Notes under the pieces: generated by a model
What the model was told of the DNA's origin: nothing
Databases searched by the model: none
Seen by the model: only the letters and a program-made list of their open reading frames with translations
In this document: positions 8,201 to 36,748 of the stretch, in pieces
Numbering within the stretch: the first letter of the stretch is position 1
Layout: each line of letters opens with the position of its first letter
Translations under genes and position numbers: made by a program
Assembly: GCF_963676685.1 (NCBI RefSeq)
Contig: NC_092344.1
Span: 71,734,001-71,798,000 of the forward strand
DNA: 64,000 nt
DNA from: Mytilus edulis
Lineage: Eukaryota
Direction: 5' to 3'

Positions 8201-11200
8201 TTTCCCACTTAGAACTTGATAAATTCATTATTAGGAATTTGATATTGCCTTATTTAATAAAGCTACATGTACATGTTATATATATTTTATTTTTTAAGAT
8301 AACATTGGTTGTAAATGTTGCGTCTGAATGTGGATATACTGATAACCATTACAAAGCACTATCAAAGATACATAACCATTTAGTTACAACTGGAAGATTT
8401 TCAGTATTAGCCTTCCCATGCAACCAGTTTGGAAAACAAGAGCCAGGAGTAAGTACATAACCTTTCTGTGTAGCATTCATAGTAAGAGCCAGGAGTAAGT
8501 AAAATTACAGACAGTCTACCCTCTCGGTCTTAATGATAATATCATGGGAATTGGCAATATATCAAGAACCGATTCTGTTAACATTTTGGATATAGTTTCT
8601 AAAACTGTTCGTAAAAATCGTTCTCATGGACGCAGAAAAAATCGCAATCAAAGAAAATTTCGGACCAACCATACAAATATTTCGGACCTAATTTCCATTT
8701 CAAAAAACAACGGCAGACATTATCTGTTAACCAAGCTTTGTTCTTTACCTATAAATAAATTAAATAAAATTTTAGAGGATTGCAACACAATTTCATATTA
8801 CAGTCCTAAGTATGAAATTGTCCAAATTATAATGGCATATTGTTATTCTAAACTGTTTCCAAAAATTGATCGCCCTGAAGATCATAAAAAACATTTTATT
8901 AAAATAAAGTATGTCAATAAAGGTTTTGATTTTGTAAATATTGCCGGTATTTTTAACGACCATTCTGTTAAAGACCAAATTCCTGGATATTTTGATAATA
9001 CTGAACTCCCTCTCATTTGTTATATTTACAAGAAATCTACCCGAAAATATGTGTTTAATTATAGCCAATTGTGTAAAGATGTAAATATCACTGAAAATAC
9101 ACCTATGTCGTGTAATTGCAGTAATTCAGAATACACCTATGGACCAATTTCCCATGTTATAACAGGAGACCTTAACATCGTTCGCGACCGAGAGTTAAAA
9201 TCATTCCTCAGTAAAGGACCTAAATATCGTCCCCCGTCAACTATTAACTGGAATGAGTGTCGTAATATCATCAACGACTCACTCCGCGCCTACTGTTTGA
9301 AATGGGTAAAACGGGAAAAAGCTGACAAAAAATCTTTGGACTCTTTTTTTAATTCAGTAATGAAGATAGTTGATATTCGAATACAACATTTTAAAGAACA
9401 TTTTACCCTCAACAAAAACTATAAAAACCCTATTTCGCGTATCAAAAATAAACTAACAGAACTAGCCAAGGAATTTGTTTTTGTCCCGGCTGATAAAGCT
9501 GCTAATAATATCATTATTGTTTGACGTAAATTTTATATAGAGGTTCTGCAAAAGGAAATCACGAATTCACCAACATTCCAACTGACTTCATTTTCAGAAA
9601 ACGACATCTGTAACAAACATAAACTTTTAGCTACTTCTTTACAAGCAGAACCAAACACAATGAAAGTCCCAACTATGTACTGGCTTCCGAAGCTGCACAA
9701 AAAACCTTACAAATATAGATTTATTTCATCTTCCAGCCATTGTTCAACTACTAAATTGTCTGTTTTACTTACTAGTACACTTGGTACAATAAAAAACCTG
9801 ATAATAAATTGTTCAAATAAGGCCTTTGAAAATAGTGGAATTAATTACTTTTGGAGTGTCAAAAACTCGTTGGAAGTACTTGATAAATTGCATGCATATA
9901 TTGGTGATTTTGAATCTGTTCAAAGTTTTGATTTTTCTACCCTATATACCACTTTGCCTCATATTCTTATTAAGAAAAAATTCACATCCCTAATTAACTG
10001 GGCATTTAAAAAGTCGGAATGCGAGTACATATGTTCAAACTCTTTTAGATCATTTTTTAGTAGCAATAAACAAAAGAACTATGTCAATTGGACATGCTTT
10101 GATACTATTTATGCACTTGAATTTTTACTTGATAACATTTTTGTTCGCTTTGGAGATTCCGTATATCGTCAAGTTATTGGAATTCCAATGGGGACTAACT
10201 GTGCACCACTTATTGCGGACCTGTTTTTGTATTGTTATGAGTTACAATTTATGACTAAAATTAGCAAAGACCCATCAAAACAACATTTGATACAAAAATT
10301 TAACAATACTTTTAGATATTTGGATGATATATTGGCTCTAAATAATGACGACTTCAGTATGTATACTAAAGAAATTTATCCTGTAGAACTTACTTTAAAT
10401 AAAGCTAATGATAACAATGACCACTGCCCTTTCCTCGATCTTGATATCTATATCATAAACGGGAAGCTTAATACAAAAATTTATGATAAAAGAGATGATT
10501 TTTCATTTCCTATTGTTAATTATCCATTTTTAGATGGTGACGTTCCCTTGTCACCATCTTATGGTGTTTATATATCTCAACTTGTACGATTCGCTCGTGT
10601 ATGTAACAATGTATTAGATTTTAGCGAGAGAAATTTATGTATTACTGAAAAATTATTACACCAGGGTTTTCGATATCACAAACTGGTCAAAACATTTACT
10701 AAATTTTATCACCGGTATAAGGAAATAATTCGTAAATATAACTCAACATGCAGACATCTTATACGTTCAGGTATTTCACATCCAAAATTTTATGGAAATA
10801 TTCTTTATAAAGCACAAAAATGTCAGTATTCTCCTCAGAAACTAACAAAACCTTTAAATAGACTTATTAAAAGGGGATATAGTTACGATACTGTTGTCAG
10901 GTCATTAAAGATTGCATATTTTGGCTTTAACATTGGTTCACTGATAGGGTCTTTGCATCGGAACTAAACACATTTATTTCTAAAAAAACAGTTGTTGGCA
11001 TGACACGGGTTATGTTCTTCTCATATATTTTATGATAGTATGATACTAAACCCCTAACGGGAGGGATTGTACCTGATATTCATATGATGAAGACATAATC
11101 TTTCAATCAGTTTAATTGAGGTCTGGAGCTGGCATGTCAGTTAACTGCTAGTAGTCTGTTGTTATTTATGTATTATTGTCATTTTATTTATTTTCTTTTG

Positions 11201-26530: not shown

Positions 26531-26536
26531 TTTATT
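26531..26536 (-). terminator. Candidate polyadenylation signal (AATAAA) of SELENOP
   Basis: AATAAA on the minus strand about 45 nt downstream of SECIS2. Confidence 0.5.
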
Positions 26537-26581: not shown

Positions 26582-26663
26582 GATCGGTTGTATGTCGATT
26601 GTTCTAATCCATTACCCTATTGTGTAGTTTCGTAATGAACCGTCATCCTGACAATATCCAATC
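26582..26663 (-). promoter_or_regulatory. SELENOP SECIS 2 (type II)
   Basis: Minus strand reads gattggatattgtcagg ATGAC ggttcattac g AAA cta cacaa tag g gtaatggatt AGAA caatcgacatacaaccgatc; 10-bp helix II pairs fully with WC/GU pairs. Confidence 0.85.
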
Positions 26664-26764: not shown

Positions 26765-26845
26765 GTTTAATCTGTTCAGCAATCAGTCAACAAAATATCG
26801 TTTAAACGTTTTATTTTGAAGCGTCATCGTTAACAATTAAACGGT
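26765..26845 (-). promoter_or_regulatory. SELENOP SECIS 1
   Basis: Minus strand reads tttaattgttaacg ATGAC gcttcaaaata AAA cgtt taa acg atattttgttgac TGAT tgctgaacagattaaa; AUGA/GA core and apical A-run present, lower helix II imperfect. Confidence 0.7.
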
Positions 26846-26940: not shown

Positions 26941-29900
26941 TTACGAAAGCCTGTGACTGTTCTGTCATCGTCAAGCATGTGAAGCATGGTGTCAGAGTCA
27001 AATACCATGTACGTCATTTTCATTACGTCAACGTCAAGCGCCTACTTGTCACTGACATCTTGTCTGTCAAGGTCAAAGTTGTCCGTCCTGGCGACTCTCC
27101 TCTCATGTCTGCCCTGATGAAGTCAATCCTTGTCATTGTCAGTCATTACCAACAGTGTGACATTGTCAAGTTCTGGTTGACCTACGACCAGAACTAGGTC
27201 AAGTACAAACGTCTGCCTCGTAGTGTTGTCCTGAGCAGTGTCAGTTCAAAGATGGTCCCTCGCTATGTCACTGGCATCTCCTCTGGCATCTTCATGTCGG
27301 AGAACTGCTTCTTGGACTTGTTCATTGACATTGTTCTTCTTGACTCACGGTTGTTTGTCATTGTCAGCGTTCGTCTGATTGGCTACTTTGTCATCGTATT
27401 TCAGCAGAGACGGTTTCCCCAATTGGTCAGTTTCATGCAAGTTCTCCACTGTCTGAAGTTATGCATTGTCACATGCAGTTTCCCGATAAATGGTCTCACT
27501 GTCATGTCTTCGTTCCAGATTCGTTGTTTTGTCAGCGTCAAGGACTTGAAGTACTCTTTGTAGAACATTGTCAAGGTCCGGAACTTTGTGGTCAATTGCA
27601 TACCTGCTGGTTTGGACACTGTCAACTAACGTTATCGCCCTCCGTCTGTCACGAGCATGTGTCGTCTGTTCGAGGTCATGAACATACCTGAACACCAGTC
27701 TCTTCAGTTAATCACTGTCAAGATGGGTTGGCTGATATATCCAAAGGTCACTTACAAGTAGCAGATGAGTTAGTTGAATGAAAATCACAAGGTCAATCAG
27801 TCAAAAATTCTCAATTTGGTCTAGCAATTTCACTATGTAAAGAGTGACGTCTTAAAAATGAATCTCAATTAAATCATACACATTCTTGAACAACAATCAA
27901 ATTGAGCTCTTCACAAGAGCACAGGCCGAGTCTTTCGGGAAAAAATGCTTGTCTACAAGCACAGTTATTTTCTAGATCTGATGAAACGGACGGACAAACT
28001 CATGCGCGTCTGTTTCTTTGATTTCTATAATGTTTTTTCATAAAATTTCATAATTTTCTAATTACTTTATGCGTGGGTATTGGACGGTTTCATCTATTTC
28101 TAGTTCAATTTGGTGTACGATTCATGTCTCGTACTGCTGATCTTCCCATTCCTACAACAATGGCGCTACCTCCAGATCTATGACTATGCGGACGTTCGTG
28201 GTTGTGCCTTCTACGACGTCGGCGTGATCTACGTATACTTCGTTGACATCCGCATGCATCTGTATCGTATGCAGTACGTATTGCCCAATCAGTAAGATGA
28301 TAACGCAACAAGCTTGATGGAAACGGTATAAAGTAAACTAATTTGCCGCATCTGTGAACAAAAAAAAGCATTATGTTTGACCAACGCGTATTGCATCCCC
28401 TCCATATCATTATGCAAAGATTTAATAAGATATATACATTACCAATGTAACGTTCTCACTCATTTTCGCACAAGTTATATACATGATCGTTTTCATGTTA
28501 GCACACATTTCACTGTCACAAAATAAGCATAAAAAAGAGCTCCGACAATGATCAATAAATGCCATGCAGTAGATTATATTGAATGTCATTAATACTGATT
28601 TAAACTTGAGAATAGAAATTGTTTTTTTTAATTCTCTCGTTTAACGTTTATGCTATCAAGCCTTAGTTCAATAGCTTAACTATAGGAATCTTAAATGTGT
28701 CCTCTGTTTTGATGGTCTTTCAGTAGCTCACAATGTATCTGTATTATAACTGCAATGATTTATGTGTTGTTTTTAATTATTTTGCGCAATAAATGTACAG
28801 GAACTTGATGTTCAGTGGTTGTCGTTTGTTGATGTGGTCCTTAAGTGTTTCTCGTTTCTCGTTTTTTATATGATTTGACAGGGACTTTCTATACGATGTT
28901 TGTATGGATTTGACCATTGGTTTTCCCGTTTGAATGATTTTACACTAGTAATTTTTGGGGCCCTTTATTTCTTGCTGCTCGGTGTGAGCCATGACTCCAT
29001 GTTGAAGACCGTACTTTGACCTATAATGGTTTACTTTTACAAATTGTGACTGGGATGGAGAGTTGTCCCATTGGCTCTCATATTACATCTTCATATATCT
29101 TCATATATCTATATGATAATGTTGCAATACTTTTTCAATTCCTACAAATTGTGACTGGGATGGAGAGTTGTCCCATTGGCTCTCATATTACATCTTCATA
29201 TATCTATATGATAATATTGCAATATTTTTTTCAATTCTTACAAATTGTGACTGGGATGGAGAGTTGTCCCATTGGCACTCATACTACTACATCTTCATAT
29301 ATATCAATATGATAATATTGCAATCTTTTTTTTCAATTCTTACCTATCATATATCAATACGTCATCTTTCCCGCCATTTAGTTTATTCCATATGTTTGTA
29401 GCGTGTGTGTCTTGGTACACAGGAAAGTTGGTTCTGCTTGAAAGTTGTCCAATTTGTTCTGGGGCTTCTTTGGAATTTACAATCATAAAACTGATTTCTG
29501 TACGGCCATGGGCGATGTATTCTTGACGAATAGTCTCAAGCCTACATTGTAAAAACATAAATTTATTTGAAGTAATCTTAATGAAGAAAGACGAATGCAA
29601 CGAGGGGATTACACAATTAAAATGCTGCTAATTTCCTAACTACTTTTTTTTTAAATCCCAAATCCCATTTTTTTTCTCGAATCTTTTCCCCAGATAAGAT
29701 TCATTTTAACGCCTATTTCTCAGAATCCCACTTGTTTACATGCTATAACCTACATCTCAAACTTGTATTTAATCTCACGAGTTTTTGATACAATAATGTG
29801 ATATAAGAAGTTAATACATTTTTCATTAAATAATAAATCTTAAATCTAAAATTATCCAGACATAAACGTTTTTTACTTTCAGACTATTCATATAGTTAAT

Positions 29901-30412
29901 CATTTGCAATCATTTTTTAAAGATGAAAATAATATAAGCCTGGTTGAATGTGAAGAAAAGGAATAAGAAATATTCAAATATTACAAATTTGTAGTATGTT
30001 ATTATAAACACAATCAAATTAAATAAAGGAATTGATATTTGCTAATCCTTTCCCATACACGAGGATGTGGATGGGGGTTTACAGAATACAAAATATTGGA
30101 CAAAAAATATAAGGTGTAAAAAATAAACATAATAGACGAAAATGATTTATACGTATAACACCATTCAATATTGCAATACGCAAATATTTATTTAATAATA
30201 ATAAAAGATGACACATACCCTACCGCTTGTTGCTGACACATGGGTCATGTAGCCAGCAGTAGTGCCACTACTGTTACTTTGCCACGAGTGTCCAGCATCG
30301 GCTGATCTCCACTGGGGGTTCGCCAGGTTGGTGGATCCTGACAGAACCTTCCAGATACGCTGACAAGTAAAGCAGCAGCGAGCAACCCGGTCAACATACC
30401 GGGGCTCCTCAT
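26941..30412 (-). CDS. SELENOP: Selenoprotein P, 600 aa with 45 in-frame UGA (Sec); coding exons 30412-30219, 29541-29344, 28351-26941
   Basis: Signal peptide; RGKVTVVALLLAT-U-PMC (UxxC, TGA at 30245-30247); FPVYQDT...IWNKLNGGKDDVLIYDR|CGKLVYFIPFPSSLL (SelP N-terminal domain); Arg/His-rich linker; last exon has 44 TGA and no TAA/TAG until 26941-26943; two SECIS downstream. Confidence 0.95.
29040..29343. repeat. ~100-bp tandem repeat x3 at the 5' end of the SELENOP intron after coding exon 2
   Basis: caaattgtgactgggatggagagttgtcccattggc at 29040, 29145 and 29241; derived from the 3' end of a SINE-like repeat at about 28800-29100. Confidence 0.85.
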
Positions 30413-32958
30413 TGTTCCTCTTCTGAAAGAAAAAAAATGAGTTAACTAAATATCTGTCATTAAGCTAAATGAAAGGTATTCCTATTGGCCGGGTTTACAA
30501 CAAAATCATTATAATAATTATAATATGAAGCTTCGTAAAAAAAATTGAAGGTAATATGAAAAAAGTTATCAAAGGTACCTGGATTATAATTTAATACGCC
30601 AGACGCGCATAAGACTCGCAAGTGACGCTCCGATCAAAATAGTCATAAAGCCAAACAAGTACAAAGTTGAAGACATTGATAATCATGAAAGTTTAACATC
30701 GCAAGAATATTTGTATATTTCTCCGTAAACCCCGAATAAAAATACGTACAAAGGACGGGGAATTAGTTTAAATCAATATACATTTACATCTATGTGTTGC
30801 AATAAACGTTCTGAACGAGTGAAATTTAGAACTTTGAAAATGCCTGTACCAAGTCAGGAACATGACTGCTGTTGTCCATTCGTTTGATGTGCTTTATCAT
30901 TTAATTTTGCCATTTGGTTAGGGACTTTCTGTTTTGAATTTTCCTCGGAGTTCAGTATTTTTGTGATTTTACTTTTTAGACGCAATTTTACAATGGTCAC
31001 TATTTTCAGCATACGGCCCCTTACTAAAAGCAATTTTATTTTTTATTGACACAATATTTGTCTTCATTTTTTCTATGATGGAGCTTCTGAGATTAATTGT
31101 GTAACTAACTGTGTAAACTTCATGTGTTGTGGTTACATGCAAACCACTTATACTTTAACAAATATTTCCGGATAGGTCGTTATAGTAAATAAAGTAATTG
31201 GGATTATTGCCAAAACCAAAAGTCTAATATAACGCTAAGTTTAAGATTCATTTCATCAGAGATACTAGGATTATAATAATTATGTACGCTTTATGCACGA
31301 TTTGTCTACAAAAGACTCATCAGTAACGCTTGAGTAAAAAAGTTAAAGTCCAAAGTTGGAAATCCTTAATTTTTCGAACAAAAAAGTTTTGAATTAGAGA
31401 GCACAGCAATAGGAACGGTGTTATCTGAAGTGAAAATTAACCATATGATTATATGATGTCCTTAATCTTCTTTAAGTTTGTAATTTCGGATACTATATAT
31501 ATATATATGTAACCTCCAATTGATTGATGTGGGAGACGGATTTATAGAAGTTTTTCTTGTTTCAGAATCCCAGTACTTATATTGTATAATTATATTTCGT
31601 GCACTTTTTGAAAGAATATAATATTGTTTAAACTAATTGATTGTGTTGTGTTTTACTGTTGCTCTCATTGACATTAAACTATTTTCCCCTAAAAAATAAA
31701 CTGGAAATACAATCAGCTTCACATGGACCACGAAATTCGGACTCCTGCAGAATCAGTTGTGCTAGCATTTAAATTTACGTTTTCGTTAAATCAGCCCAAA
31801 GCGAGACAGACCGTGCGACACCCTAATGTGTTGTCATGGTCGTTAAACACCCCTATCAGTAATACAGTACCTCTCAACTATGTAAAAGCACACCAAATTG
31901 GCCAAATAAAATTATGTCTTTTAATTGTCAGTGTGCAATTTTCTAAAAATCACATTATTTATTCATCTGTCCATTGTCAATAACGTTATCTATATATATG
32001 GTTTAAACTCCAGTTGATAAATATATGAAAAACAAGTTCAACGGCCCTATGCTCCTGTACTTGAAATAGATAATAGGGCAATAAGATGTAAGAATTTAGA
32101 TTTTGAATATGCTTTTAAAAATTCTACTTGTTCCTGTTTTGCCCATCTTGCCAGAAGCTCAGGAGATATAAAACGCTGACAGGAATACAGTGGCGGATCC
32201 AAAACAAAACAAAAAAAAAGGGGGGGGGGGGTTGGTTCCGGGGGTACGAACCCATATTTCCTGTGACGATACCGACTGTAAAATTACAAAACCATTGAAG
32301 GAAGTTCACAGTGCGACGGCTTTATAGTTGGAACATTTGTCATCTGTGTTATCATACAGCTTATATTTTTACTTCTCAACCGATATTAACTGATATTCCA
32401 AAGGATAAAGATACGATAGACATAGTCAACCTAAAACAATTTTTATGATGAAATAAGTCATAATGGTTAACAGTAATTAAAGCAAATTTTTGGACAAAAC
32501 TGGTGAACGTACCACCAACACCTGAAATAAACAAACAAACAACTACTAACAATAACACACGGCCCAGATAGTCTGACACAAAGCGACTATTTAGACAACA
32601 ATCAACAGGAAAGGGCATCGATCAATCTGTATACTTGATTCAAATTCAGTAAACATCAGTAAAAGCCTAAATTTACTGATCTTCCTATGTTTGAAAGGGC
32701 TATAGGACGCGCAATCGGACGCCATTATACTTCTTCTCTCACGACAAGATTAAAGTATACTTTCATGACATAAAATGTTTTTTTTTAGATTTCTTCATTT
32801 GAGTAATTGTGTGTTTTATGTCAAGGAGTATGACAGTTGTTGTCCATTCGTTTGATGTGTTTTATCATTTGATTTTGCCATTTGAAAAGGGACTTTCCGT
32901 TTTGAATTTTCCTCGGAGTTCAGTATTTTTGTGATTTTACTTTTTACAATTACTTACT

Positions 32959-33180
32959 CGTGTATATAATTTATAAATGTAAGAAAGGACTGGATTTTCT
33001 AACAAAATTAGATGGTCGGAAGTCTCTCATCACACCACCTACAAAGCTAAATGCAACATGGATTGAAAACTACATTCCTACCTTATATGTTTAAGTGTTC
33101 CTGTGCGAAAAGTTGATGTCGATTACAGTTTATTCGTAATAAAATGTAGACAACAATTTTCCTAGGCTTTTATATATACT
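32959..33180 (-). promoter_or_regulatory. Possible TATA box and non-coding first exon of SELENOP
   Basis: The ATG exon starts at a splice acceptor (tttcag, exon start 30422), so an upstream exon is required. Minus-strand gtatatataaaa near 33168-33179 and donor-like gtaagt near 32952-32957 fit, but are not proven. Confidence 0.3.
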
Positions 33181-34065: not shown

Positions 34066-34716
34066 AACAAGTGAAACTGCGAGCTACTGCTCACTGATGA
34101 TACCCCCGCCGCAAGTGGATAATATTAATAGTGTAAAAATATGCAAGTGTTCGGTAAACATGAAGTTGTTGAGTGATGAATCTGAAAACGCATCACACGG
34201 TATAGCTGACTTATATTGACCCTTAAACCAAATTTCAGAAATCCCTGTATTGTAGTTCCTGAGAAAAATGTGACGAAAATTTTCAACTTGGCTATCATGT
34301 GTAAAATCATACAAGTGTTTGGTTAACAGGAAGTTGTTGAGTGATGAATCTGAAAACGCATCACACGTTATAGTTGACTTATATCAAGCCTGAAACCGAA
34401 TTTCAGAAATCCTGGTAGTGCAGTTCCTGAGAAAAATGTGACGAAAAATTTTCAACTTGGCTATCAGGTGTAAAAATGATACAAGTGTTCGGTAAACAGG
34501 AAGTTGTCGAGTGATGAATCTGAAAACGCATTAAACAGTATAGCTGACTTATATCAAGCCTGAAACCAAATTTTAGAAATCCTGGTAGTGTAGTTCCTGA
34601 GAAAAATGTGACGAAAAATATTCATGGGACGGACGGACTGATGGACTCACGAACTGACGGAAGGACAGACAGAGGTAAAACAGTCAGATACCCCCTTTTT
34701 CAAAGCGGGGGTATAA
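34066..34716 (-). mobile_element. Helentron/DINE-like element with ~169-bp tandem core (x3)
   Basis: Hairpin atacccc...gggggtat at 34688-34714, (GGAC)-type microsatellite, gagtgatgaatctgaaaacgcat at 34171, 34339 and 34509. Confidence 0.75.
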
Positions 34717-35299: not shown

Positions 35300-36748
35300 A
35301 TAAAATTGAGAATGGAAATGGGGAATGTGTCAAAGAGACAACAACCCAACCAAATAAAAAACAACAGCAGAGGGCCACCAACAGGTCTTCAATGTAGCGA
35401 GAAATTCCCGCACCCGGAGGCGTCCTTCAGCTGGCCCCTAAACAAATATATACTAGTCCAGTGATAATGAACGCCATACTAATTTCCAAATTGTACACAA
35501 GAAACTAAAACCAAAATAATACAAGACTAACAAAGGCCAGAGGCTCCTGACTTGGGACAGGCGCAAAAATGCGGCGGGGCCAAACATGTCTATGAGATCT
35601 CAACCCTCCCCCCCATACCTCCAACCAATGTAGAAAAGCAAACGCATAACAATACGCACACCACTCAGCCCAAGAGAAGTCCGAGCCTGATGTCAGAAGA
35701 TGTAACCAAAGAAAATAAACAAAATGACAATAATACACAAATAACAACAGACTACCAGCAGTCAACCGACATGCCAGCCCCAGACCCCAACCAAACCGAC
35801 CGAAAGATTATGATTTCATCATATGAAAATCAGGCACAATCCTTCCCGTTAGGGGTTTAGTATCATACCATCATAACATATATGAGAAGAACATAACCCG
35901 TGTCATGCCAACAACTGTTTTTTAGAATAAATGTGTTTAGTTCCGATGCAAAGACCTTATCAGTGACTCAATATTAACGCCAAAATATGCAATCTTTAAT
36001 GACTTGACAACAGTATCGTAATTATATCCCTTCTTAATAAGTCTATTCAAAGGTTTTGTAAGTTTCTGAGGTGAATACTGACACCTTTGTGCTTTATAAA
36101 GAATATTTCCATAAAAAATTGGATGTGAAATACCTGAACGTATTAGAAGTCTGCATGTTGAGCTATATTTACGAATGATGTCTTTATACCGATGATAAAA
36201 TTTAGTAAATGTTTTGACTAGTTTGTGATATCGAAAACCCTGGTGTAATAATTTTTCAGTAATACATAAATTTCTCTCGTTAAAATCTAAAACATTGTTA
36301 CATACACGAGCGAATCGTACAAGTTGAGAAATATAAACACCGTAAGATGGTGACAAGGGAACGTCACCATCTAAAAAACGGATAATTAACGATAGGAAAT
36401 GAAAAATCATCCCTTTTATCATAAATTTTAGTATTCAGCTTTCCATTAGTGATATAGATATCAAGATCGAGAAAAGGGCAGTGGTCATTGTTAGTATTAG
36501 CTTTATTTAAAGTAAGTTCAACAGGATAAATTTCATTAATATACATACTAAAGTCGTCATTATTGAGAGCCAAAATATCATCCAAATATCTAAAAGTATT
36601 ATTAAATTTGTTTATCAGATGTTGTTTCGATGGGTCTTTGATTATTTTTGTCATAAATTGTAACTCATAACAATACAAAAACAGGTCCGCAATAAGTGGT
36701 GCACAGTTAGTCCCCATTGGAATTCCGATAATCTGACGATATACGGAA
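35300..36748 (-). mobile_element. Second, 5'-truncated and frameshifted copy of the Naiad-type retroelement
   Basis: ORFs 36364-36717 and 35937-36422 match the C-terminal RT of the copy at 8501-11612; +1 T frameshift near 36375; full 3' UTR with the same terminus. Confidence 0.92.
35806..35898 (-). promoter_or_regulatory. SECIS element of the second retroelement copy
   Basis: Minus strand reads ATGAT ggtatgat act AAA ccc ctaac ggg aagg attgtgcc TGAT; core identical to copy 1 and helix II still pairs despite substitutions. Confidence 0.78.

What the first reader, a model, noticed from the sequence alone, without database searches (positions are those of the whole stretch)
26941..30412. Hidden 600-aa selenoprotein P with 45 UGA (Sec) codons
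Seen: the minus-strand last exon 28351-26941 is 470 codons with 44 TGA and no TAA/TAG until the final TAA; one more TGA forms UxxC in the first coding exon; two SECIS follow. Sec alternates with Cys in U/C-x-U/C pairs (UQU, UQC, CQU, URU) every ~7-10 residues. Established: human SELENOP has 10 Sec, and bivalve SELENOPs with dozens of UGAs have been reported (Baclaocos et al. 2019), so the class is known. Inference: standard annotation would truncate or mis-splice this gene, and this exact Sec count may be undocumented.
Basis: partly seen in the sequence, partly recalled or inferred. Interest (0 to 1): 0.85.

Follow-up and report, generated by a model that had tools for sequence, protein, structure and literature searches.

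The report
Mussel selenoprotein P, 45 selenocysteine codons
This is the real, single-copy selenoprotein P gene of a Mytilus mussel: a 600-residue secreted selenium carrier whose message has 45 UGA "stop" codons read as selenocysteine. The kind of gene has been known in bivalves since 2019, but public annotations of Mytilus cut it down to 155 residues.

Summary
Minus-strand exons 30412-30219, 29541-29344 and 28351-26941 have clean GT/AG borders and give 600 codons. There are 45 in-frame TGA and no TAA or TAG before the final TAA. None of 15,000 shuffled frames lacked TAA/TAG.

All three exon pieces hit Pfam SelP_N in colinear order. Sec56 sits in a U-x-x-C motif. The gene is single-copy in the 1.37 Gb genome.

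Full-length orthologues were recovered from intron-less 2.2-3.4 kb contigs, called with TGA read as Trp. They include M. coruscus (599 aa), three other mussel-like lineages and an oyster. At our 69 Sec/Cys columns of exon 3 they keep W (=UGA) or Cys at 67-69, while other tail columns are only 24-57% identical.

A SECIS lies at 26654-26588 (28 bits). A weaker full-length one lies at 26836-26772 (17 bits). The genome holds at least five tRNA-Sec genes.

RefSeq's M. edulis "selenoprotein P-like" (155 aa) is identical to residues 58-212. Other Mytilus annotations skip Sec56 or change frame.

The class is established (oyster 46, unionid 132, lamprey 162 UGAs). This is a new, mis-annotated member, not a new kind. 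Direct RNA evidence for this species could not be obtained.

The parts
33082..33145 (-). Inferred non-coding 5' exon. The donor GT is at 33081-33080 and a TATA-like TATATATAAAAG lies at 33177-33166. The 5' end is approximate.
   Evidence: Read directly. The junction ...CATATAAG|AAGAGGAACAATG is the one used in annotated Mytilus proteins P0106 and P0108 (TLKHIRRGTM...) and P0149. There is no RNA evidence for this genome.
30219..30422 (-). First coding exon (acceptor AG at 30424-30423). The ATG is at 30412. It encodes a signal-peptide-like N-terminus and the start of the SelP_N domain, and ends with two bases of codon 65.
   Evidence: Pfam SelP_N E 2.9e-7, profile positions 3-35. Donor GTATGT.
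30245..30247 (-). TGA codon 56, the Sec of the U-P-M-C redox motif.
   Evidence: The orthologues have W-P-M-C at the same place.
29344..29541 (-). Second coding exon (residues 65-131).
   Evidence: Pfam SelP_N E 2.6e-9, profile positions 47-116. AG/GT borders. Identical to residues 9-73 of RefSeq XP_071131665.1.
26941..28351 (-). Coding part of the last exon: the end of SelP_N, a basic/His-containing linker, and the Sec-rich tail with 44 TGA (first at 28107-28105, last at 26967-26965). The stop TAA is at 26943-26941.
   Evidence: Pfam SelP_N E 2e-5, profile positions 118-161 for the first 81 residues. Orthologue alignment.
26772..26836 (-). Proximal SECIS candidate, with AUGA ... AAA ... UGAU in register. 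It begins 105 nt after the stop codon.
   Evidence: RF00031 full-length match, 17 bits, E 0.52 over 4227 families, so about 1e-4 for this one family. The MFE fold has z = -2.1. This is a weak match.
26588..26654 (-). Distal SECIS.
   Evidence: RF00031 full-length match, 28 bits, E 0.0027. The fold has z = -3.6. A 28-bit hit is expected about once by chance in the whole 1.37 Gb genome.
26531..26536 (-). AATAAA, the likely polyadenylation signal. It implies an mRNA of about 2.3 kb.
   Evidence: Read. The predicted length matches the 2264-2346 nt orthologous cDNA contigs.

Best explanation
This is the orthologue of selenoprotein P (SELENOP) in a Mytilus mussel, most likely M. edulis. A three-coding-exon mRNA of about 2.3 kb encodes a secreted protein of 600 residues. 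It has an N-terminal thioredoxin-like SelP_N domain carrying one Sec in a UxxC redox motif. Behind that comes a tail of about 390 residues carrying 44 more Sec, arranged with Cys in [U/C]-x-[U/C] dyads about every 11 residues. The UGAs are redefined from stop to Sec by SECIS element(s) in the 3' UTR. This needs the Sec machinery; at least five tRNA-Sec genes are present here, while the protein factors (SBP2, eEFSec) were not looked for. Once decoding has started it proceeds processively along the tail. The product serves as a selenium-dense carrier or store. Shown here: the gene structure, homology, UGA-only stops, selection on the Sec/Cys columns, the SECIS matches, the tRNA-Sec genes, and intron-less full-length transcripts in related species. 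Inferred from published work on oyster and vertebrate SELENOP: full-length translation, secretion, and the selenium transport role.
For: There are 45 TGA and no TAA/TAG in 599 codons, and 0 of 15,000 shuffled frames match this. The frame is unique in the window. SelP_N scores above its Pfam cut-off in each of the three exon pieces, in colinear order. The gene is single-copy in the genome. RefSeq XP_071131665.1 'selenoprotein P-like [Mytilus edulis]' equals residues 58-212 exactly and spans both predicted splice junctions. Full-length relatives of 566-623 aa come from contigs of 2.2-3.4 kb, which is shorter than the 3.47 kb genomic CDS span and so must be intron-less. They are read with TGA as W. 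Orthologues keep W or C at 67-69 of our 69 Sec/Cys columns of exon 3, while other tail columns are 90, 57, 49, 24 and 27% identical. They never show W or C where we have another residue. The three true Trp codons are TGG. SECIS matches appear, and tRNA-Sec with anticodon TCA. The literature records multi-Sec SELENOP in hundreds of metazoans: oyster 46, bivalve 132, lamprey 162 (PMC8230778, PMC13134290).
Against: No spliced full-length contig from the M. edulis complex itself was found. Its members in the collection are genomic exon-3 readings of 488-550 aa. That W in the orthologue proteins stands for TGA is an inference, since their DNA could not be fetched. Both SECIS matches are below Rfam's gathering score, and the proximal one is weak. 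The stem-loop over the start codon reported for oyster is not supported here (z = -1.0).
Confidence: 0.93

Rival explanations
1. The gene is SELENOP, but the tail is seldom translated. Most ribosomes stop at UGA56 or UGA213, so the main products are short N-terminal forms and the 45-Sec protein is a minor species.
For: Known from the literature (own knowledge of Baclaocos et al. 2019, not readable here): decoding at the first UGA is inefficient, about 5% in oyster, and mammals make truncated SELENOP isoforms. The proximal SECIS is weak here.
Against: 67-69 of the 69 Sec/Cys columns of exon 3 are preserved against 24-57% identity at other tail columns. TAA/TAG are wholly absent over 388 tail codons in six lineages. 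Both require that the tail be translated and selected. In oyster the distal UGAs are decoded at nearly 100% (own knowledge of the same paper).
Confidence: 0.12
2. The TGA-rich stretch is a decayed or non-coding 3' region (a pseudogenised tail), and the real protein ends at residue 212, as RefSeq annotates.
For: Public annotations end there.
Against: Decay would scatter TAA and TAG, with about 21 expected and none seen. Decay would also bring frameshifts. The frame is kept over 566-623 aa in all the lineages found, and the Sec/Cys columns are kept.
Confidence: 0.01
3. The UGAs are read as Trp or Cys, through a variant code or near-cognate read-through, not as Sec.
For: The gene callers that produced the orthologue proteins chose a TGA=Trp code.
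Against: True Trp codons here are TGG and align to conserved W in the N-terminal domain. The UGA columns exchange with Cys only, which is the Sec signature. SECIS elements and tRNA-Sec genes are present. Mytilus nuclear genes use the standard code, and RefSeq stops at TGA213.
Confidence: 0.02

Closest known systems
Pacific oyster (Magallana/Crassostrea gigas) SelenoP, 46 UGAs (Baclaocos et al. 2019, J Mol Biol 431:4381; cited in PMC8230778, PMC8557442)
   Same: Both have a SelP_N domain with U-P-M-C, a tail of about 400 residues made of U/C-x-U/C dyads, a nearly equal Sec count, a length of about 600-620 aa, and SECIS in a short 3' UTR. The oyster-cluster protein P0023 (623 aa) keeps 67 of our 69 Sec/Cys columns.
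   Different: Only about 27% identity at other tail columns. Individual positions differ between Sec and Cys. The start-codon stem-loop described for oyster is not supported here, and a leader ORF could not be assessed without the 5' end of the transcript.
Mytilus coruscus SELENOP transcript (P0129 cluster, 599 aa, Logan contigs 2264-2346 nt; species assigned through annotated protein P0149)
   Same: 92% identical over exon 3. The exon junctions are the same and all 44 tail Sec are shared.
   Different: It has 48 putative Sec instead of 45, because three of our Cys are Sec there. It is one residue shorter.
Human SELENOP (10 Sec, two SECIS)
   Same: The same family: an N-terminal UxxC thioredoxin-like domain, the conserved stretch ending ...IYDRCG, a Sec/Cys-rich C-terminal tail, and a secreted selenium carrier.
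   Different: The human protein has 10 Sec against 45 here and a long His-rich linker, where ours has a short Arg/His stretch. Its tail is far shorter and its coding sequence is split over more exons (own knowledge).
Freshwater mussel Elliptio complanata (132 UGAs) and lamprey SELENOP (162 UGAs; PMC13134290)
   Same: The same modular expansion of the multi-Sec tail, with UGA as the only in-frame stop type.
   Different: These have three to four times more Sec. The Mytilus gene lies in the middle of the known range.

Membership tests
Selenoprotein P (SELENOP) | N-terminal SelP_N (PF04592) domain | tested here: met
   The three exon pieces score 30.5, 37.2 and 24.6 bits against a cut-off of 23.2. 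They hit profile positions 3-35, 47-116 and 118-161 in order. A six-frame genome search finds only this locus.
Selenoprotein P (SELENOP) | Sec in a UxxC redox motif in the N-terminal domain | tested here: met
   TGA at codon 56 gives U-P-M-C. W-P-M-C or W-P-T-C stands at the same position in five orthologue lineages.
Selenoprotein P (SELENOP) | C-terminal tail with multiple in-frame UGA and no other stop type | tested here: met
   44 TGA and 0 TAA/TAG in 469 codons, matched by 0 of 15,000 shuffled frames.
Selenoprotein P (SELENOP) | UGA positions align with Sec or Cys in orthologues | tested here: met
   At our 44 tail U columns the orthologues show W (=UGA) or C, with a single P in each of the two most distant lineages. 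67-69 of the 69 U/C columns are kept. That W stands for TGA is inferred, not read from DNA.
Selenoprotein P (SELENOP) | SECIS element(s) in the 3' UTR (two in multi-Sec SELENOP) | tested here: inconclusive
   The distal element scores 28 bits (E 0.0027) and the proximal 17 bits (E 0.52). Both are full-length RF00031 matches with the AUGA/AAA/GA core, and both are below the gathering score of 35. SECISearch3 and orthologue UTRs were not available.
Selenoprotein P (SELENOP) | Transcript carries the N-terminal domain and the Sec-rich tail contiguously | tested here: met
   This is met in relatives: six M. coruscus contigs of 2264-2346 nt encode the uninterrupted 599 aa, and the same holds for four other lineages.
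Selenoprotein P (SELENOP) | Secreted (signal peptide); selenium actually incorporated | not testable with these tools
   The N-terminus MRSPGMLTGLLAAALLVSVSG looks like a signal peptide by eye only. No labelling or mass spectrometry data are available.
Sec-decoding capacity of the host genome | tRNA-Sec gene present | tested here: met
   Five RF01852 hits at 77-79.6 bits against a cut-off of 47. ARAGORN calls tRNA-SeC with anticodon TCA for the three copies examined.

The most novel reading that the evidence does not exclude
The full-length Mytilus edulis SELENOP (45 Sec) is absent from every public annotation. Its Sec count is still changing: 45 here, 48 in M. coruscus, 47 and 36 in two other mytilid-like lineages, and one Sec/Cys difference (residue 582) among contigs of the same species complex. 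This high Sec demand may go with an amplified tRNA-Sec gene set of at least five intact copies, four of them in a segmental duplication on one chromosome. If so, mussels would be a natural system in which the selenium load of one protein varies between individuals and co-evolves with tRNA-Sec dosage.
Probability: 0.25. Interest if true: 0.45.

Novelty: new member of a known kind. Interest (0 to 1): 0.3.

Why it matters
The main value is in correcting annotation. The most selenium-dense protein of a major aquaculture and biomonitoring species is represented in RefSeq and ENA by fragments of 114-217 aa, or by a wrong-frame model. Expression, proteomic and selenium or mercury toxicology studies in Mytilus therefore miss it. 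The orthologue set recovered here gives a clean example of Sec/Cys turnover at fixed positions in a fast-diverging tail. It does not change what is known about recoding, since processive multi-UGA decoding in bivalve SELENOP has been shown experimentally in oyster.

Tried and rejected
W=TGA and SECIS covariation therefore remain unchecked.
- Baclaocos et al. 2019 is not held by DOI or PMC id. Its content is cited from other papers or marked as own knowledge.

Searches that gave little:
- A metagenome scan with the exon-3 protein P0118 found nothing. With exon 2 (P0113) it found only two distant contigs at 38-41% identity and no mytilid DNA. L003 is so poor in TAA/TAG that the TGA-frame scan is uninformative there.
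- A second protein search with P0135 found no spliced full-length cluster for the M. edulis complex.
- TRF finds no DNA-level tandem repeat in the Sec-rich exon, apart from a 29-nt AT-rich patch. The dyad modules are therefore old and diverged.
- Folding of 30424-30325 around the AUG gives z = -1.0, which offers no support for an initiation stem-loop.
- The bacterial promoter scan is irrelevant to a eukaryotic gene.
- The pseudogene and variant-code readings were rejected, as set out under the rival explanations.

Handling of the spliced model: the joined protein was not sent to any search tool. Exons and stop-free pieces were searched separately by reference. Joining was done only inside local scripts, for counting and for one string comparison with P0109.

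Full report
OBSERVATION

On the minus strand, the frame that starts one base into exon 28351-26941 runs for 470 codons. It contains 44 TGA, no TAG and only the terminal TAA. The other two frames hold 7 and 10 TGA mixed with 8 and 25 TAA/TAG.

Base composition predicts about 8 TGA and about 21 TAA+TAG. Among 15,000 dinucleotide-preserving shuffled frames the maximum was 35 TGA, and none lacked TAA/TAG. A scan of all six frames of the 64 kb window finds no other TAA/TAG-free stretch with more than 8 TGA.

GENE MODEL

The coding exons are 30412-30219, 29541-29344 and 28351-26941. The acceptors are ...tctttcag...caatgtag and ...gttcacag, and the donors are GTATGT and GTAAGA. The phases are compatible and the CDS is 1803 nt. 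This gives 600 residues with 45 U, 27 C and 3 W, all three W encoded by TGG. TGA56 forms U-P-M-C.

A non-coding 5' exon ending at 33082 is inferred. Its junction with 30422 is the one used in annotated Mytilus proteins P0106, P0108 and P0149.

An AATAAA at 26536-26531 predicts an mRNA of about 2.3 kb. The introns are 677 and 992 nt. The second contains a 96-bp tandem repeat.

IDENTITY

Each stop-free exon piece was searched separately by reference. All three hit Pfam SelP_N above its cut-off, colinearly at profile positions 3-35, 47-116 and 118-161. A six-frame search of the whole assembly (1.37 Gb, 2368 contigs) finds SelP_N only at this locus.

An exhaustive HMMER search with exon 2 returned 104 relatives. 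The best, P0001, is RefSeq 'selenoprotein P-like [Mytilus trossulus]'. Its cluster holds XP_071131665.1 'selenoprotein P-like [Mytilus edulis]' (P0109, 155 aa). P0109 is letter-for-letter our residues 58-212 and spans both splice junctions. The window is therefore from M. edulis or something indistinguishable from it at this locus.

ANNOTATION STATE

- RefSeq M. edulis and M. trossulus start at Met58, after UGA56, and stop at UGA213.
- M. galloprovincialis VDI10809.1 has 114 aa.
- M. edulis CAG2198612.1 and CAG2245080.1 splice around the segment holding Sec56 and end at UGA213.
- M. coruscus P0149 does the same and then enters a wrong frame of the tail.

ORTHOLOGUES AND SELECTION

The protein collections also hold full-length relatives that automatic gene callers translated with TGA as Trp:
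- P0129 (599 aa), assigned to M. coruscus through P0149;
- P0002 (590 aa);
- P0130 (592 aa);
- P0017 (615 aa);
- P0023 (623 aa), in one cluster with a Saccostrea protein;
- P0131 (566 aa).

They come from contigs of 2.2-3.4 kb. Six independent M. coruscus contigs measure 2264-2346 nt. That equals the mRNA length predicted here and is shorter than the 3472 nt genomic span of our CDS. These contigs must therefore be spliced transcripts that carry the N-terminal domain and the whole UGA-rich tail in one piece.

Members of 488-550 aa (P0135 and others) begin with a translation of our intron 2. They are genomic readings of exon 3 from the same species complex, 98.1-98.7% identical to ours.

Exon 3 was aligned locally to these proteins. 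At our 44 U columns the orthologues show W or C only, except for a single P in each of the two most distant lineages. Over all 69 U/C columns of exon 3, the number kept as W/C is 69, 69, 69, 67 and 67. Identity at the other tail columns is 90, 57, 49, 24 and 27% in the same order. No orthologue has W or C where we have another residue.

This is the classical Sec/Cys exchange signature, under strong purifying selection in a tail that otherwise diverges fast. Putative Sec counts are 45 here, 48 in M. coruscus, 47 in P0002 and 36 in P0130. One genomic contig of the same complex (P0143) has Cys at our Sec582. The caveat is that W=TGA in these proteins is inferred, because their DNA could not be fetched.

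RECODING SIGNALS

Rfam SECIS_1 gives a full-length match at 26654-26588 of 28 bits. Its E-value is 0.0027 over 4227 families in a 661-nt search. The genome-wide scan shows that 28 bits is expected by chance about once in 1.37 Gb. Finding it in sense orientation 290 nt behind this stop codon is therefore highly non-random.

A second full-length match at 26836-26772 has AUGA, AAA and UGAU in register but scores only 17 bits. Its E-value is 0.52 over all families, which is about 1e-4 for this one family. Its helix II is AU-rich with mismatches. I treat it as a plausible proximal SECIS that needs SECISearch3 or covariation evidence.

32 of the 45 UGAs are followed by C.

The genome has five tRNA-Sec genes at 77-79.6 bits. 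The three examined with ARAGORN have anticodon TCA. Four of the five lie within 560 kb on contig 7. Three of these were compared and sit in surroundings about 92% identical, with an upstream TATA-like box.

MECHANISM

Shown here: gene structure, family membership, UGA-only stops, selection on the Sec/Cys positions, SECIS-like elements, tRNA-Sec genes, and contiguous transcripts in relatives.

Inferred from the literature: SECIS-dependent processive Sec insertion giving a full-length secreted protein that carries or stores selenium. Oyster SelenoP with 46 UGAs is translated full-length, inefficiently at UGA1 and nearly fully at distal UGAs. That comes from my own knowledge of Baclaocos et al. 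2019. The class and the counts are confirmed in PMC8230778, PMC8557442 and PMC13134290.

COMPARISON AND NOVELTY

Multi-Sec SELENOP is described for hundreds of metazoans, with bivalves among the richest: oyster 46 and a unionid 132, with lamprey now at 162 (PMC13134290). This gene is a mid-range member of that class, so it is not a new kind.

Three things may be new. The first is the correct full-length model for M. edulis, which no public annotation holds. The second is the Sec/Cys turnover within Mytilus. The third is the multi-copy tRNA-Sec set. Whether Baclaocos et al. already listed a Mytilus count could not be checked.

LIMITS

The key paper is not held. No RNA, ribosome or protein evidence for this species was obtained.

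The joined spliced protein was not sent to any search tool. It was assembled only in local scripts, for counting and for one string comparison.

Earlier notes of this scan report Sec-coding Naiad retrotransposons in the same Mytilus genome. That fits the many identical-score SECIS hits, but I did not test it here.

Noticed in passing
G000:C7:74815896-74815981, 74942257-, 75215219-, 75374377- and C1:49149863-49149948 (loci L005-L007): There are at least five full-score tRNA-Sec genes. ARAGORN gives anticodon TCA for the three examined. Four lie within 560 kb; three of those were compared and share about 92% identical surroundings, including an upstream TATA-like box. That points to a segmental duplication. 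Most animals have one or two copies (own knowledge). The amplification may relate to the 45-Sec SELENOP.
   Followed up: partly
G000:C10:14401393-14442259 and C945: A tandem array with a period of about 895 bp and at least 45 units. Each unit gives a sub-threshold hit (45.9 bits) to the tRNA-Sec model, so it is probably another long-variable-arm tRNA.
   Followed up: no
G000, dispersed: About 50 RF00031 SECIS hits share the identical score of 33.8 bits and are spread over all chromosomes. That pattern indicates a repeat family carrying its own SECIS. It is consistent with earlier notes on Sec-coding Naiad retrotransposons in this genome.
   Followed up: no
window 29093-29343: A 96-bp tandem repeat (2.6 copies, 90% matches) fills the start of intron 2 and ends exactly at the first intron base. 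A Mytilus-type interspersed repeat follows at about 28790-29090.
   Followed up: partly
P0143 versus window 27000-26998 (Sec582): A genomic contig of the same species complex has Cys where the window has TGA (Sec582). This is a possible segregating Sec/Cys polymorphism.
   Followed up: partly
P0149 (annotated Mytilus coruscus protein, 305 aa): This public model skips the Sec56 segment. After the N-terminal domain it continues in a wrong reading frame of the Sec-rich exon.
   Followed up: yes
L003:3779-3976 and L004:1395-1547: Two JGI metagenome contigs (11.9 kb and 2.0 kb) encode an exon 38-41% identical to the SelP_N exon 2. They are presumably from unidentified marine eukaryotes.
   Followed up: no
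window 8544-9524 (+), 9660-10967 (+), 35937-36422 (-): These are the only ORFs of 150 aa or more in the window. None has a Pfam hit. The third lies in repeat-rich sequence upstream of the SELENOP gene.
   Followed up: partly
window about 34160-34650 (minus strand reading): About three direct copies of a unit of roughly 170-180 bp (...TTTTCGTCACATTTTTCTCAGGAACT...). They were seen by eye, in the region between the inferred 5' exon and the next upstream sequence.
   Followed up: no
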